This document shows positions 27,153 to 57,596 of a stretch of DNA of 64,000 nt, in pieces; position 1 is the stretch's first letter, and every line of letters starts with the position of its first letter. This DNA comes from Lytechinus pictus. Lineage: Eukaryota. The notes beneath the pieces are model-generated. The model was given only the letters and a program-made list of their open reading frames with translations. It ran no database searches and was not told the DNA's origin. The position numbers and the translations under genes are program-made. The stretch spans positions 16,554,001 to 16,618,000 of the forward strand of contig NC_087246.1 in the NCBI RefSeq assembly GCF_037042905.1, read 5' to 3'.

Positions 27153-27202
27153 GTTATAAGCTATAGCTTCAAGCTACTCGAGAGACCACAATGTACACCA
27201 AT
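27153..27202 (+). promoter_or_regulatory. LC8 promoter module A-distal (tandem GTTAYAAGCTA-like repeat + CCAAT)
   Basis: GTTATAAGCTA-ta-GCTTCAAGCTA, then 21 nt, then CCAAT at 27198. Confidence 0.7.
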
Positions 27203-27338
27203 AGAAATCAATTACACAGATATACCGGGCAGATATATTGATCGACATCGGACCTTTACACCGGTGTGCTTTGCATTCTTCTGATCCACTTGACCAGTTT
27301 GCAAAGGATGGACTTCGCCCGCCGTTTTCTTTTATTTT

Positions 27339-27421
27339 GTTATAAGCCCTGGTTACAAGCTACGGAATGGTTTGCCTCGTAAGCCAATAAGAAATGACGG
27401 ACATCTTGGTTGCTAGGTGAG
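27339..27421 (+). promoter_or_regulatory. LC8 promoter module A-proximal + X-box-like site
   Basis: GTTATAAGCCC-tg-GTTACAAGCTA, 21 nt, CCAAT at 27384, GTTGCTAGGTGAG at 27409. TATAAG near 27445 and putative donor GTAGGA at 27533 follow. Confidence 0.75.
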
Positions 27422-28107
27422 CGAGTGTGAGGAACCCCACATCAGTATAAGAAGGACCGGTTGGTAAAAAACAAATTCATTGTGGACATTGGACCTCTGC
27501 CCACCTCTCCTCATACTATTTGATATAATAAGGTAGGATGAAATAATGATTCTCTAAAATTAATTACTTTTGGTTTTATGTCTTGCAGGTTACAAGTTCG
27601 TCTATTGTAAACAAGAAAGATTCATGTCTATCAATTTTGGCCATAAATCTGCCAAGTCACATATTATACTTGCAGAAATATATAACATTGACCTTAATTA
27701 TTATTTCTTTTTGCATTTAGAACGATATTTTAAGAAGGCATGGTGTATTTTTTTTTTTTTTTTTTTTGCTTTGGCCCCTTTCTCTTGCGAGGAGATCTGT
27801 AGTCCTATTTTCAAATTCATCAAAGGACTGTCAGCCTATATTTGTAATTTTAATTGTGAAATTGAATCATTCAAGATCATAATTATCAATACCATGTATT
27901 TTCATAACTTTTACACCGCAGTCCATTTTGATATAATGTGTTGAGATGTGACCAGGCTTCGCCTCTCTTATGTTTTCTCATTATTAATGTCCCTTTAAAA
28001 TAATCATGGATCCTATGCTTTATTTTTGTTTTGTTTAAACACAGGTGAAAATTCAGATTTAATCAATATTTGTGATTATTTTATCTTACAGACACAAATC
28101 TGCCATC

Positions 28108-28377
28108 ATGTCTGAACGCAAGGCCGTCATCAAGAATGCTGATATGTCAGAAGACATGCAGCAAGACGCTATCGACTGCGCCAACCAGGCCATGGAGAAG
28201 TTCAACCTCGAGAAGGACATCGCTGCCCACATCAAGAAGGAGTTCGACAAGAAGTACAACCCGACATGGCATTGCATCGTCGGCCGCAACTTCGGCAGCT
28301 ACGTGACACACGAGACCAAGCACTTCATCTACTTCTATCTGGGACAAATCGCCGTGCTTCTCTTCAAGTCTGGATAA
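28108..28377 (+). CDS. DYNLL: Dynein light chain LC8-type, paralog A (89 aa, His41)
   Basis: [19 protein letters not shown]...[36 protein letters not shown]. The true start is the ATG at 28108, after acceptor ttacag at 28091; the ORF-track extension from 28072 begins inside the intron. Confidence 0.98.
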
Positions 28378-53448: not shown

Positions 53449-53718
53449 ATGTCTGAACGCAAGGCCGTTATCAAGAACGCTGATATGTCAGAAGACATGC
53501 AGTCTGATGCAATTGAATGCGCTACCCAAGCTCTCGAGAAGTTCAACATCGAGAAGGACATCGCTGCCCACGTCAAGAAGGAGTTCGACAAGAAGTACAA
53601 CCCAACTTGGCATTGCATTGTGGGTCGCAACTTCGGCAGCTACGTGACCCATGAGACCAAGCATTTCATCTACTTCTATCTGGGACAAGTCGCCATCTTA
53701 CTTTTCAAATCAGGATGA
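53449..53718 (+). CDS. DYNLL: Dynein light chain LC8-type, paralog C (89 aa, His41 Val42)
   Basis: Canonical LC8 sequence; polypyrimidine tract plus aag at about 53423. Confidence 0.98.
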
Positions 53719-56700
53719 TTTTTTTTTATTGGAATTATTTTGAGATCTTTGTATTCTGCTAAAGACACCGTCCATTTCCAACATGTGAATTATTTTTTTT
53801 AAAGAAATCTTGTACGTAGTATTATTTCACGAACTAAAAGGAAATATAAGTACTAAAGTGACGTCAGGTTCTGAAAACAGGTTGTATATGGAGGGGACAC
53901 CTTGTGGACCACTGAGCTCATGGTTTTAATCAGCTCGTTATTCATACGCCTACAAAACAGCTGCACTAGAAAATCACGTATAGTAAAAATGATTTATGCA
54001 ACTCGGTTTATCATGTTTAGTATGTTATGAACTCATCAGATATTGTTATAATAAGAAAAAAAAAACAATGCTTAATTTCTTATATTTACTTTTCAGAAGT
54101 TGTTTGATTTAAAGAAAGTATCAAACTGTCTTTCTTTAAATTCATAAGTACATGTAGAGAACAATAATTGCTTCATTATGTTTTTACTATGTTAGTAAGT
54201 CAGAAGTAGATAACTGCATACAAAATCAGTCCTATATTTATTCTATGTCATAAGCATGCATGCACTTACAGAACCGTCCATCAAACAGTCCTCAAATGCG
54301 TACTTATTTCTTTAATAAATGGTCTTCATAGTCCAAAAAAGTTTAGCAACAATTTACAAATTTTGGGGTATACATATATATTCACATTCATTTCTGTTGG
54401 CAAAAACGAAAGTGAGTAAAATATTTCGTGGGTAAATTCTTGCGCAGTAAAATTTACGCAACATCAAATGTTATTTTATCAAACAAAAATACACGCTCCC
54501 ATTCAGACAATATCGGATAAACATGTTTTCATAGTCCCAAACTACCATACTGACTGAAGGTTTACCTGGACGCTGGAAAGGGTAACTTCATATCAGAAGT
54601 AGATAACTGCATACCAAATCAGTCCTAGTACTATTAATGTCTTATGTCATATTAAGCATGCACTTTTAGAATCGTCTATAGCAGGGAGAATACTGAAACA
54701 AAACAAATGAATATTGTTCCTAATAATAATAATAATAACAATAATAATTAAAACATTACCACGGCGTTCGCTTGCCCAGAAAGAATGATCTTTTGGCATA
54801 TCTGGAGTAGTATTGTTCACCAAGCTATATACTGTTTCGGAATATACGATGGTGTGTCCAGTTTAACATTAAAATGCAAGTACAAAATATCAATTGAATC
54901 GATATTTTCACCCAAAGTTTGGACTAGATTTTACCATATTTTTGAGAACGTTTAGAAAGAGAATTTAGATAGATTGTCTTAATTCCGTGCGAGGGCGAGC
55001 ACTGCTGCACCATTACTTACATTATACAATTTTATTTGATATAATTTTTAATGGAAATATTTGAATAGGAGGGCTGGGCGAGTGGGGGAAGAGAAGTATG
55101 GTTGTTTTAATCTTTACTTATTTGATAAAAAATATTGACTTGTATAAAGCTCCATCTTCTGTAAAGATAATTATTGTTCACTGTATTTGTTTTCTGAATT
55201 ATACATTTTTTTCTGGAATAATAGTATAAGATATATTATGTACATTTTACAAACAATCAACTTAAATCGAATAAACGATAATAGATGGACATTAACCGGA
55301 ATTCTTCCTTTTTACCACTTTTTTAACTTAGTGGTTCTTGTCTTAAATGGAACTATATCGAAGAAAATCTTGTTGTTTTATAGACTGGAACCTGTGAGTA
55401 GATTTTTAGAGTGGTTTTAGTTGAATGCGATATGAGTTCTTGCTTTTATTTATTTAACTGTGTCCATCCGTATAAAAAGATTACTATGCTGCCTCATGAA
55501 CATATCATGTTTAAAAAATATGACGTATTATACACAATTTATCTTTGTGTGGGGAGGTATTATGTTATTTATCATTGGTTCTTGATTGTACATTGATTGA
55601 ATGGAATATTAAAATACTGATTAAAAAAAATATATATTGTTTTCAATAAAGTTCATTATGATGTCAACACTTGACCCATGTTCCTTGTGCTATTGAATGC
55701 TAGACTTGCAATTGGCATATATTATCTACCAACATGACCGGCATGTTGCGTTGTCCTCCATACTAGTGACGACATTATCATGATTATAATAATGTCAGTT
55801 TATTTTAGTTGGTCTGTCAGTATGACAGATCACTTCTTATGTTCTTTATGATATACATCTTTTTCATTCTCAATATTTGTGCATACCATCACACCATATA
55901 CGGCTAATCGGGTATTCATGTGGCCATATTTCGGGCCATGTTAAGGCGAATCCTACCAAATTCAAATTTGGTATGTGGATGTTTTTCATATCCTCTTCAG
56001 TGATAAAAACATATATGTACACACACACAAGCACCCACCCTTACACACACACACACACACATATACATACATAATATATATAGATACATACATTATATTA
56101 TGTATAAAAAACGATGCAAATGTGACACCATCACTTCGGTACTGCATTGTTATTAATCGCCTAGTCACAATCATGACAATAGTATATCAGTCTACACCAA
56201 AGATTACCCTCAGCGGAAAGTTTTTTGTTTTGTGCTTTATGATACACACACACACACCTTCCCCACGTACGTTTCGTTTGGGACTCAGTTTATCTTCCTC
56301 TATGTATGACTAATAATCAATGAATAATTAATGCACATTACTAACAAAATAAAGTATTTCGTCGAATGTTACTAATAAATAGATCAATATAAAAAATTCA
56401 ATTCAAACGTATAAAATTAATAAATAAACAAATTAATTAATTAATTAATAACAAATATATTTTAGTATGCTTAAGGATGACGAGAAAAACGTGTTTTTTA
56501 CTTCCACTTTAGTAATAAATAAACCTATGAAACATTAAACAAAAAAATCTTATGAGGCAAAGGCGTTGAGTTAATTGATCATAAATTAAATTGTTGACAA
56601 CTCGCATGTGAAACCAAAAAGTATCTCAGTTCTTAATCCAATGTTATCCAGTATAAGTACTTCACAAAATGATACAAAAGCAAGAGGATCATAAAATTGT

Positions 56701-57473
56701 ATCATGATATATTATTTTAAATGGTTTTCTCTTTGATATAAAACCTATTCCAAAGCGTGGACTGTGATGTAAATTTCATGATAGCTTCTTGACATCCATT
56801 CCCTAAATTTAGACAGATGCTCAAAGAGCCCTCTTATACTAGGAAAATAACAATATCACGGAAAGAGGGCACTCGATATTTTATGTTTTCTTTCACAGAA
56901 AATCGGTGGTTGTTACCAAAGCTAAAGAATACTCTAAAGGGGTACTTCATACTGAGCAAATCGCTTTAAATTCCTTTAAATTCCATTTAAATCTGTTGAA
57001 AAATAACGAAAACACAGAACTTCAAATTTTAGCCATATTTTGTGAAAGCAGTTACTAGTATGCACGGCGCCATGAATGTAAAACAGGTTTTGCTGATCAT
57101 CATGTCCCTGCTTTCCCTTTTCTTAAGTTATCAGATGAAATCAAAATATTTTCATAATCATTTTCTTACATGCGTTATGATTATTTTTCCCTTGCATCAA
57201 AGTTCCAGCAATATTCGAACACAAGAAATCAGTTTGTAATCCTCTTTTTCTTTTCATTCTCGGATCGGAGGACAAAATGTGAAGAAATATAATATAATAT
57301 GATAAAATTCAAAAGCATAAGTGGAGATAAGACATCAGCCAGCTCACTGCATATTAATTTCTGCTTTCCCACCTTCTCAAGTCTGGTGAAAAATGACGCC
57401 ATTGTTACCAATGCGTTGCCAACCTTAAAATACCTTGGTCCGTGATAATACTAAATTGCAGCGTCACTATAGT

Positions 57474-57596
57474 GTTACAAGCCATAGTTGTAAGCTACCA
57501 GTCTAATGGGTAAACATCCAATGAAAACTGGTTCGCACAATTATCTCTTTTTTCCCTTCTCGTGTCAGCAATCGAGCGAAGAGCAGCCGTGGCAAC
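57474..57596 (+). promoter_or_regulatory. LC8-D promoter module + X-box-like site
   Basis: GTTACAAGCCA-ta-GTTGTAAGCTA, 20 nt (containing GTAAACA), CCAAT at 57518, GCAGCCGTGGCAAC at 57583; putative donor GTAAGC at 57787. Confidence 0.72.

What the first reader, a model, noticed from the sequence alone, without database searches (positions are those of the whole stretch)
27153..57522. Shared, spacing-constrained promoter module upstream of all four LC8 paralogs (tandem GTTAYAAGCTA at 13-bp period + CCAAT two helical turns away)
Seen: five copies. 27153 GTTATAAGCTA-ta-GCTTCAAGCTA; 27339 GTTATAAGCCC-tg-GTTACAAGCTA; 39334 GTTATAAGCTA-cg-GTTACAAGCTA; 51577 GTGACAAGCTA-ct-GTTGTAAGCTA; 57474 GTTACAAGCCA-ta-GTTGTAAGCTA. 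Each has an exact 13-bp period and is followed after 21, 21, 19, 20 and 20 nt by CCAAT. All share one orientation and lie about 150-330 bp upstream of a putative first-intron donor, while surrounding DNA does not align. Established: CCAAT is the NF-Y box, and in mammals and Drosophila LC8 transcription is driven by the zinc-finger factor ASCIZ/ATMIN, which LC8 binds back via TQT motifs. Inference: this is a cooperative, stereo-aligned site for an LC8-dedicated factor plus NF-Y that co-regulates the array. It may be the ASCIZ element or a ciliary/testis regulator. I do not recognise the motif as a catalogued one.
Basis: partly seen in the sequence, partly recalled or inferred. Interest (0 to 1): 0.85.

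Follow-up and report, generated by a model that had tools for sequence, protein, structure and literature searches.

The report
Conserved LC8 gene promoter module
A pair of 12-base repeats next to a CCAAT box sits just upstream of nearly every canonical LC8 (dynein light chain) gene in this sea-urchin genome and in a distant urchin, so it is a real, selected promoter element, but the same repeat is also the core of a mobile element with thousands of copies, so it is not private to LC8.

Summary
All five tandem sites are present at the stated coordinates, on the + strand, with an exact 13-bp period and a CCAAT 19-21 nt downstream.

It is a real promoter element:
- The tandem unit GTTAHAAGCYAC lies upstream and in sense orientation of 12 of the 13 single-exon LC8 genes on contigs C2 and C6 (16 sites).
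- Synonymous divergence between these paralogs is mostly 0.5-1.7, and their promoters align only over the module.
- RNA evidence places the proximal copy of the first gene about 105-130 nt upstream of exon 1. CCAAT is at about -80 and TATAAGAA lies just before the start.
- Diadema setosum keeps the unit, the 20-nt spacing, CCAAT, TATA and the splice donor in the same order at the syntenic MIF-LC8 locus.

It is not dedicated to LC8. GTTAHAAGCYAC followed by an inverted CCAAT (ATTGG) has 3,493 exact genomic hits against 1 control hit. It is the core of a roughly 150-bp MITE. LC8 promoters resemble that MITE over only about 25 bp.

Mollusc and lepidopteran LC8 promoters show a similar layout with different unit sequences. 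This fits an ancient LC8 regulator such as ASCIZ, but the factor is unidentified. The gap at 41923-42081 lies in an intron and does not affect the finding.

The parts
27153..27176 (+). Distal W1 module: GTTATAAGCTA-ta-GCTTCAAGCTA. Its CCAAT is at 27198-27202, and a GTTACGTAAG palindrome-like site lies at 27132-27141.
   Evidence: It is identical in the related species, where the 93-nt block 27124-27216 has one mismatch against 91% identity overall.
27339..27362 (+). Proximal W1 module: GTTATAAGCCC-tg-GTTACAAGCTA.
   Evidence: The related species differs only at the two spacer bases. The second unit is one of the two longest identical runs against Diadema.
27384..27388 (+). CCAAT box of the proximal W1 promoter, about 80 nt upstream of the 5' end of the exon-1 contig.
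   Evidence: It is invariant and equally spaced (20-21 nt) in Diadema.
27403..27417 (+). Second conserved block, ATCTTGGTTGCTAGG. It contains GTTGCTAGG, which resembles an RFX half-site (my knowledge, not tested).
   Evidence: An 11-nt identical run with Diadema. GGGTTGCTAT lies at the same relative place in both Mytilus paralogs.
27446..27453 (+). TATAAGAA, the likely TATA box of W1.
   Evidence: CAGTATAA is conserved in Diadema.
27467..27532 (+). W1 non-coding exon 1. The 5' end lies at or slightly upstream of 27467. The GT..AG intron runs to about 28090, and the ATG is at 28108.
   Evidence: joint 27530>28090 (cut may shift by 2), seen in one raw RNA read (X20) and one contig (X15). There is no read depth over 27120-27439 in X19, X20 or X15.
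28108..28377 (+). W1 LC8 coding exon (89 aa plus stop).
   Evidence: Very high contig depth in run X1.
39334..39357 (+). W2 module GTTATAAGCTA-cg-GTTACAAGCTA. CCAAT is at 39377-39381 and the predicted donor GT at 39617.
   Evidence: The related species differs only at one spacer base.
41923..42081 (.). Assembly gap inside the predicted W2 intron. It is not part of the element.
   Evidence: the flanks are collinear in the related species.
42972..43241 (+). W2 LC8 coding exon.
51577..51600 (+). W3 module GTGACAAGCTA-ct-GTTGTAAGCTA. CCAAT is at 51621-51625 and the predicted donor GT at 51860.
53449..53718 (+). W3 LC8 coding exon.
57474..57497 (+). W4 module GTTACAAGCCA-ta-GTTGTAAGCTA. CCAAT is at 57518-57522 and the predicted donor GT at 57787.
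60786..61055 (+). W4 LC8 coding exon.

Best explanation
This is the proximal-promoter control module of the canonical LC8 (DYNLL-type) genes of sea urchins. It consists of one to three head-to-tail copies of a 12-bp site, GTTAHAAGCYAC, at a 13-bp period. A CCAAT box follows about 20 nt downstream, then a TATA box about 55 nt further, then a short non-coding first exon.

Shown: its position relative to the transcript in W1, its presence at nearly all canonical paralogs, its survival through heavy neutral divergence, and its conservation in a distant urchin.

Inferred: a sequence-specific factor occupies each 12-mer, probably a multi-zinc-finger protein bound as two parallel copies. It cooperates with NF-Y on the neighbouring CCAAT box to set a common transcription level for the LC8 gene array. 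ASCIZ/ATMIN, the known LC8 regulator of flies and mammals, is the leading candidate for that factor but is unproven.

The same site plus an inverted CCAAT box has been amplified by a MITE. Whatever binds it therefore has thousands of potential sites in this genome.
For: - Genome-wide association: sense-strand tandem units lie 0.8-4.6 kb upstream of the coding exon of 12 of the 13 single-exon LC8 genes on contigs C2 and C6 (16 sites, all sense). There are none at the 6 divergent C11 LC8-like genes. Background is 0.05 hits per 64 kb.
- Selection: paralog dS is 0.22-3.2, mostly 0.5-1.7. Even so, unit positions 1-4 and 6-9 are kept in 13-15 of 15 sites, and the promoters align only over the module. 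Against the related species, all three changes inside modules fall on spacer bases.
- Position: in W1, exon 1 is at or upstream of 27467 through 27530-32, spliced to about 28090. This puts the proximal module at about -128 to -105 and CCAAT at about -83.
- Deep conservation: at the syntenic MIF-LC8 locus of Diadema setosum, the five best matches to a position weight matrix (PWM) built from the Lytechinus units are all on the + strand upstream of the two LC8 genes. The proximal promoter is collinear with W1: unit, 20 nt, CCAAT, ATCTTGGTTGC, CAGTATAA, AAGGTA donor, within 57% overall identity.
- Similar layout elsewhere:
  - Lottia: the longest word shared by diverged LC8 promoters is TGATAGAAACCACT, with CCAAT 21 nt after it; one promoter has a second unit at a 13-bp period.
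  - Lepidoptera: the only 10-mers shared by all 10 ctp upstream regions form two units 13 bp apart.
- The full reader pattern with forward CCAAT occurs only at the five window sites among the 30 strict genome hits.
Against: - No binding or reporter data exist; function is inferred from conservation and position.
- The transcription start is mapped for one gene only, from one read and one contig.
- The unit is not specific to LC8: 3,493 MITE-borne copies.
- CCAAT is missing or altered at 7 of the 16 sites. Three have CCAGT or CCATT, and the two L031 sites have TGACGTCA instead.
- One C2 paralog (L037) lacks the module.
- Outside echinoids the unit sequence differs, and the echinoid-unit PWM finds nothing significant there. 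Cross-phylum homology of the site is suggestive only.
- ASCIZ: no motif letters could be obtained for comparison, and I did not show that this genome encodes ASCIZ.
Confidence: 0.75

Rival explanations
1. The modules are decayed, functionless copies of the abundant MITE that happened to land near LC8 genes or were carried along by gene duplication.
For: GTTAHAAGCYAC-N14-19-ATTGG has 3,493 exact hits against 1 control. The tandem form has 117 hits at 2 or fewer mismatches, most in MITE context. The MITE has terminal inverted repeats GGGGCCTGTTTCATAAAAC....
Against: A MITE profile aligns to LC8 upstream regions only over the roughly 25-bp units, with no terminal repeats and no ATTGG block. CCAAT has the opposite orientation. 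All 16 sites are in sense orientation. The sites survive dS of 0.5-1.7 while their flanks do not. Orthologous sites are present in Diadema, while the sampled MITE copies are 74-91% identical to the query copy and so look like much younger insertions than that conservation would require.
Confidence: 0.06
2. The module is functional but originated from an ancient member of this transposon lineage that was co-opted by the ancestral LC8 gene. The reverse is also possible: the MITE captured an LC8-type promoter fragment. This concerns origin, not present function, and is compatible with the best explanation.
For: LC8 promoters and the MITE subfamily share the same 12-mer, the same 13-bp tandem period and a CCAAT-type box at nearly the same distance. 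One Diadema site reads GTTATAAGCTACTGAAA, as the MITE core does.
Against: There is no homology beyond the units. The CCAAT orientation differs. The direction of transfer cannot be told, and use of the same host factor by both would give the same picture.
Confidence: 0.25
3. The 12-mer is read by a factor other than ASCIZ, for example a ciliary or germline regulator or a Myb- or OVO-like protein, with NF-Y as partner.
For: LC8 is an axonemal dynein component. A separate RFX-like block (GTTGCTAGG) is conserved between CCAAT and TATA in W1, Diadema and Mytilus. The unit junction reads AC-N-GTTA, which resembles Myb and OVO cores (from memory, untested). Thousands of MITE-borne sites fit a factor with many targets better than one with a single main target.
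Against: The 12-mer itself does not fit the palindromic X-box (read from sequence). Conservation extends evenly over 12 bp, which suits a four-finger protein. An LC8-promoter-specific layout seen in three phyla parallels the known conservation of ASCIZ-to-LC8 control (PMC5963919 and the papers it cites).
Confidence: 0.35
4. Similarity of the modules is kept by gene conversion among paralogs rather than by selection on a binding site.
For: The genes are tandem paralogs. W2 and W3 coding sequences are close (dS 0.22).
Against: The conversion tracts would have to be only about 25 bp long with unconverted flanks. They would also have to reach paralogs 13-15 Mb away and on another chromosome. Conversion cannot explain the Diadema sites.
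Confidence: 0.03

Closest known systems
ASCIZ (ATMIN)-to-DYNLL1/ctp transcriptional feedback loop of mammals and Drosophila
   Same: It is a promoter element found specifically at LC8 genes. A 12-bp site suits the factor's four zinc fingers. LC8 dimerises ASCIZ chains (PMC5963919 raises dimerisation as possibly needed for promoter binding), and parallel dimerisation would fit a direct repeat (inference).
   Different: No ASCIZ site sequence was available to compare. Binding is untested. I did not show an ASCIZ gene in this genome. Here the site also occurs thousands of times in a MITE, unlike the picture of a factor with one main target.
X-Y (SXY) module of MHC class II promoters: RFX, CREB and NF-Y on sites with fixed helical spacing
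   Same: A sequence-specific site lies a fixed distance of about two helical turns from a CCAAT/Y box close to the start site. An RFX-like GTTGCTAGG block and, at one paralog, TGACGTCA sites occur in the same promoters.
   Different: The 12-mer is a direct repeat, not an X-box. The order and distances differ. The comparison rests on my memory of the MHC module and is an analogy of mechanism, not membership.
Transposable elements that carry and spread transcription-factor sites
   Same: A roughly 150-bp MITE carries the same 12-mer plus a CCAAT-type box in at least 3,493 copies.
   Different: The LC8 modules themselves are not recognisable MITE copies and are conserved in Diadema, which the sampled MITE copies, at 74-91% identity, are unlikely to predate.

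Membership tests
CCAAT-box (NF-Y type) proximal promoter | CCAAT pentamer about 60-100 nt upstream of the transcription start | tested here: met
   In W1, CCAAT at 27384-27388 lies about 80 nt upstream of the exon-1 contig start at 27467. The other genes are judged from predicted donors only.
CCAAT-box (NF-Y type) proximal promoter | Occupancy by NF-Y | not testable with these tools
   Needs ChIP or EMSA.
ASCIZ/ATMIN response element of LC8 genes | Located in the promoter of LC8/DYNLL genes and conserved with them | tested here: met
   12 of 13 canonical paralogs. Diadema orthologs.
ASCIZ/ATMIN response element of LC8 genes | Sequence matches the ASCIZ/ATMIN DNA motif | not tested
   A motif exists in HOCOMOCO according to bioRxiv 10.1101/2025.11.09.687492 and in a figure of PMC10847093, but no letters were available. 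PMC3270970 and PMC3914618 are not held.
ASCIZ/ATMIN response element of LC8 genes | Same element at LC8 promoters of other phyla where ASCIZ acts | tested here: inconclusive
   Lottia, Mytilus and ten Lepidoptera show tandem or single 12-mers of the form GWWANAANCY, with 13-bp periods and/or CCAAT at 20-21 nt. The echinoid-unit PWM gives no significant hits there. The frog locus gave only a post-hoc match.
Copy of the ~150-bp MITE family | Terminal inverted repeats GGGGCCTGTTTCATAAAAC... and homology along the element | tested here: not met
   nhmmer with the MITE profile aligns only profile positions about 92-120 at LC8 sites. Terminal repeats are present in true copies.
Copy of the ~150-bp MITE family | Inverted CCAAT (ATTGG) 14-19 nt after the unit | tested here: not met
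   LC8 sites have a forward CCAAT at 19-21 nt. MITE copies have ATTGG.
RFX X-box | Imperfect palindrome GTNRCC-N0-3-RGYAAC | tested here: not met
   The unit GTTAHAAGCYAC is a direct repeat. Position 5 is not C-specific and the second half does not fit (one search counts, read against the consensus from memory). The separate block GTTGCTAGG is only a half-site.

The most novel reading that the evidence does not exclude
The 12-mer direct repeat is the long-undefined ASCIZ/ATMIN response element, ancestral to bilaterian LC8 genes. It would be read by two zinc-finger domains held in parallel by LC8 itself, so that the product of the gene sets the geometry of its own activator on DNA. In this urchin lineage a MITE has copied the element with a CCAAT box thousands of times, creating a large pool of potential secondary sites or decoys for the LC8 feedback circuit.
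Probability: 0.22. Interest if true: 0.85.

Novelty: new member of a known kind. Interest (0 to 1): 0.62.

Why it matters
LC8 is a dimerisation hub with very many partners, and its level is thought to be set by a feedback loop through one transcription factor. The papers I could read do not give a DNA site for that loop. A short, sharply conserved direct repeat at a fixed distance from a CCAAT box, present at a dozen paralogous promoters and in a distant urchin, gives a concrete element to mutate, footprint and use as bait. Its amplification by a MITE is a natural experiment on what happens when the site of a supposedly narrow regulator is scattered across a genome. If the factor turns out not to be ASCIZ, the module still defines how a 12-gene LC8 array is co-regulated.

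Tried and rejected
- MITE relic: rejected as the main explanation.
- RFX X-box reading of the unit: rejected from the sequence.
- Echinoid PWM scan of non-echinoid LC8 loci: 5 hits at 15 bits or more in 324 kb against about 1.2 expected, none at a clear promoter position. I did not use them.
- Frog DYNLL1 locus: no tandem site. One exact GTTACAAGCT lies in repeat-rich intron DNA and I judged it chance.
- TARA metagenome scaffolds encoding a protein identical to W4, and ENA contigs encoding W2's protein: no module, organism unknown.
- Exact-protein look-ups that found nothing: W3, both Diadema LC8 proteins, and a Branchiostoma protein.
- Cluster listing gave no further echinoderm proteins.
- Literature: the 12-mer as a word gave one unrelated paper. 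The ASCIZ promoter-mapping papers are not held.
- L001, a non-MITE tandem hit followed by TATAAAAG: no coding ORF within 3 kb.
- Target-site duplication and superfamily of the MITE: my regex approach found only one clean copy, so this is unassigned.
- A generic detector of 13-bp tandems is not specific enough to use alone.

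
Full report
**Observation.** All are on the + strand, and shuffles gave none.
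- Each site is two 11-12-nt units with an exact 13-bp period.
- A CCAAT follows 21, 21, 19, 20 and 20 nt after the site.
- Because the pattern was fitted to the data, I also scanned with a consensus. Background is 0.05 hits at 4 or fewer mismatches per 64 kb on both strands.
- Four 89-aa single-exon LC8 coding sequences lie downstream.
- Promoter slices of the four genes align to each other only over the module.

**The gap.** The run of N at 41923-42081 lies between the W2 module and the W2 coding exon, in the predicted intron. The two flanks map in order and on one strand to a single locus in the assembly GCA_018143015.1. Linkage of module and gene is therefore supported, and frame does not matter.

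**Genome-wide picture, part 1: LC8 genes.** The genome (812 Mb) has 19 Dynein_light matches. I fetched up to 6 kb upstream of each and scanned them.
- Twelve of the 13 single-exon LC8 genes on contigs C2 and C6 carry the tandem motif upstream. There are 16 sites in all, every one in sense orientation.
- One gene has a triple unit, and two genes have two or three separate modules.
- The six divergent LC8-like genes on C11 (97-104 aa), the partial hit on C10 and one divergent C2 gene have none.
- CCAAT follows at 19-21 nt in 9 of the 16 sites. Three have CCAGT or CCATT at that place. The two sites of one paralog are followed by TGACGTCA instead.
- Position counts define a 12-mer, GTTAHAAGCYAC, with positions 1-4 and 6-9 kept in 13-15 of 15 sites.
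- Synonymous divergence among the 89-aa paralogs is 0.22-3.2, mostly 0.5-1.7. Unconstrained DNA between them is therefore scrambled, which is what the flanks show.

**Genome-wide picture, part 2: a MITE.** The strict pattern has 30 genomic hits against 0 control, and the consensus at 2 or fewer mismatches has 117 against 2.
- Most non-LC8 hits share flanks...ATCAATGRCAA before the repeat, and CTGAAAT...TTTGATTGGCTGAGAG after it. The CCAAT box is therefore inverted.
- A DNA search and more copies showed a roughly 150-bp element with terminal inverted repeats GGGGCCTGTTTCATAAAACTTGTTAT....
- Most copies carry one unit and a subfamily carries two.
- GTTAHAAGCYAC-N14-19-ATTGG has 3,493 exact hits against 1 control. 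The forward-CCAAT version has only 15 hits, of which two are LC8 sites.
- A profile of the MITE aligns to LC8 upstream regions only across the roughly 25 bp of the units, with no terminal repeats and no ATTGG block.

The motif is therefore not private to LC8, but the LC8 modules are not MITE copies.

**Position relative to the transcript.** Laying RNA reads and contigs on 26800-29199 gave a GT..AG joint from 27530 (may shift by 2) to 28090, in one raw RNA read and one contig.
- The contig starts at 27467, and there is no depth over 27120-27439 in three of the four runs; X1 has one low-depth (3.2) contig over 27096-27251.
- Exon 1 is thus about 27467-27532, and the ATG is at 28108.
- The proximal module (27339-27362) lies about 105-128 nt upstream of the exon. 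CCAAT is about 80 nt upstream, and TATAAGAA (27446-27453) lies just before it.
- This is one gene and thin evidence. For W2-W4 only predicted GT donors are available, at 283, 283 and 313 nt from the module start.

**Other species.**
- *Related species.* The assembly GCA_018143015.1 keeps both W1 modules and the W2 module. I believe this is Lytechinus variegatus, from memory of the accession; no tool verified it. Promoters are 91-96% identical and the W2 intron about 85%. The three changes inside modules all fall on spacer bases.
- *Diadema setosum.* This test is more telling. The species name comes from the source name of protein P0006, and the assembly is GCA_964275005.2. From general knowledge it is separated from camarodont urchins by some 200 million years or more.
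  - The locus keeps MIF-LC8 synteny, as in the related species.
  - The five best matches to a position weight matrix (PWM) built from the Lytechinus units, over 21.8 kb, are all on the + strand upstream of the two LC8 genes.
  - The proximal promoter of the first gene is collinear with W1: unit, 20 nt, CCAAT, ATCTTGGTTGC, CAGTATAA, then the AAGGTA donor.
  - Overall identity is 57%, and the unit and the TTGGTTGC block are the two longest identical runs.
- *Lottia gigantea.* Three single-exon LC8 genes each have GATAGAAACCAC upstream in sense orientation.
  - Two of these promoters are recent duplicates.
  - The third is diverged, and the longest word it shares with the others is TGATAGAAACCACT.
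  - CCAAT follows at 21 nt. The diverged promoter has a second unit, GATATAAAACAC, at a 13-bp period.
- *Lepidoptera.* In ten species, the only 10-mers shared by all ctp upstream regions form two units, GAAAGAAGCC and GAAAGAATCC, 13 bp apart. A third unit lies 14 bp further on. They sit about 110 nt before the exon-1 donor.
- *Mytilus.* GATAGACTGGAC, 20 nt, CCAAT, then GGGTTGCTAT.
- *Limits.* These share a loose form GWWANAANCY, the period and the distance to CCAAT. The echinoid-unit PWM finds nothing significant outside echinoids, and a frog locus gave only a post-hoc match. I treat the cross-phylum likeness as suggestive.

**Mechanism.**
- *Shown:* a conserved, oriented, spacing-constrained element immediately upstream of the start of canonical LC8 genes.
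- *Inferred:* each 12-mer is bound by a sequence-specific protein. Twelve evenly conserved bases suit four zinc fingers. The direct repeat calls for two DNA-binding domains in parallel, and NF-Y binds the CCAAT box next to them.
- *ASCIZ/ATMIN:* it has an N-terminal zinc-finger domain and many LC8-binding motifs. [quoted passage not shown] A parallel dimer fits a direct repeat. This is inference. I could not obtain the ATMIN motif or the promoter-mapping papers. I also did not show that this genome encodes ASCIZ.

**The MITE relation.** Three readings remain open.
- Both use the same host factor.
- An old member of the transposon lineage seeded the LC8 promoter.
- The MITE picked up an LC8-type promoter piece.

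The sampled MITE copies are 74-91% identical to the query copy, whereas the LC8 module is conserved in Diadema. The present copies are therefore unlikely to be the source, but the lineage could be old.

**Verdict.** The promoter-module reading is supported. The 'LC8-dedicated' reading is not, and ASCIZ remains a reasonable but untested candidate. I found no description of the motif in the searchable literature.

Noticed in passing
window 27403-27417; L092 about 10020-10035; L105 about 10036-10047: A second conserved promoter block, ATCTTGGTTGC(T/C)A.GG, lies between CCAAT and TATA in W1 and in Diadema. GGGTTGCTAT lies at the same relative place in both Mytilus paralogs. GTTGCTAGG looks like an RFX half-site, which would tie LC8 to ciliary gene control.
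   Followed up: partly
window 26803-27095: This stretch is transcribed and ends abruptly at 27096-27099, with at least five different continuations in reads and contigs and one constant continuation before 26803. Homology with the related species starts only at about 27090. It is probably a repeated or mobile piece inserted just upstream of the W1 promoter.
   Followed up: no
L031 (G000:C2:31499557-31506108), 4622 and 4545 nt upstream of the LC8 coding exon: The two modules of this paralog, whose protein looked to me (from memory) the most like fly Ctp, are followed by TGACGTCA (CRE-like) sites instead of CCAAT.
   Followed up: no
window 27132-27141; L033 about 21 nt before its module: GTTACGTAAG and GTTATGTAAC, near-palindromes of the PAR-bZIP/C-EBP type, sit 21 nt upstream of the first unit at two paralogs.
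   Followed up: no
window 28130-28960: Run X1 covers the W1 coding exon and 3' UTR at contig depths of thousands but not exon 1, and shows a Nextera-type adapter end. It is probably a 3'-biased library in which W1 is very highly expressed. The transcript appears to end near 28960.
   Followed up: no
G000:C11:23.28-23.32 Mb (L038, L040-L044): A cluster of six divergent LC8-like genes with 8-15 extra N-terminal residues lacks the module entirely. This suggests separate regulation from the canonical paralogs.
   Followed up: partly
L093 8636-8647 and 17783-17794 region; L094-L103 about 35 nt before the units: TCGAACGCACC in Lottia and GAACGCCCTCT in Lepidoptera lie upstream of the 12-mer units (about 50-60 nt in Lottia, about 35 nt in Lepidoptera). 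This may be a second shared element of LC8 promoters.
   Followed up: no
window 3692-3732 (-) and 752-799 (-): Weak fragments of the MITE family (unit plus ATTGG core; part of the left arm) occur in the window, away from the LC8 genes.
   Followed up: no
window 11312-11451 and 16459-16636: Two further assembly gaps, outside the finding.
   Followed up: no
L015 and L017 (G000:C5:42028577 and C5:48314384): Two tandem-motif copies share more than 150 nt of downstream sequence that differs from the MITE consensus. They may be a chimeric or second repeat family carrying the same 24-mer.
   Followed up: no
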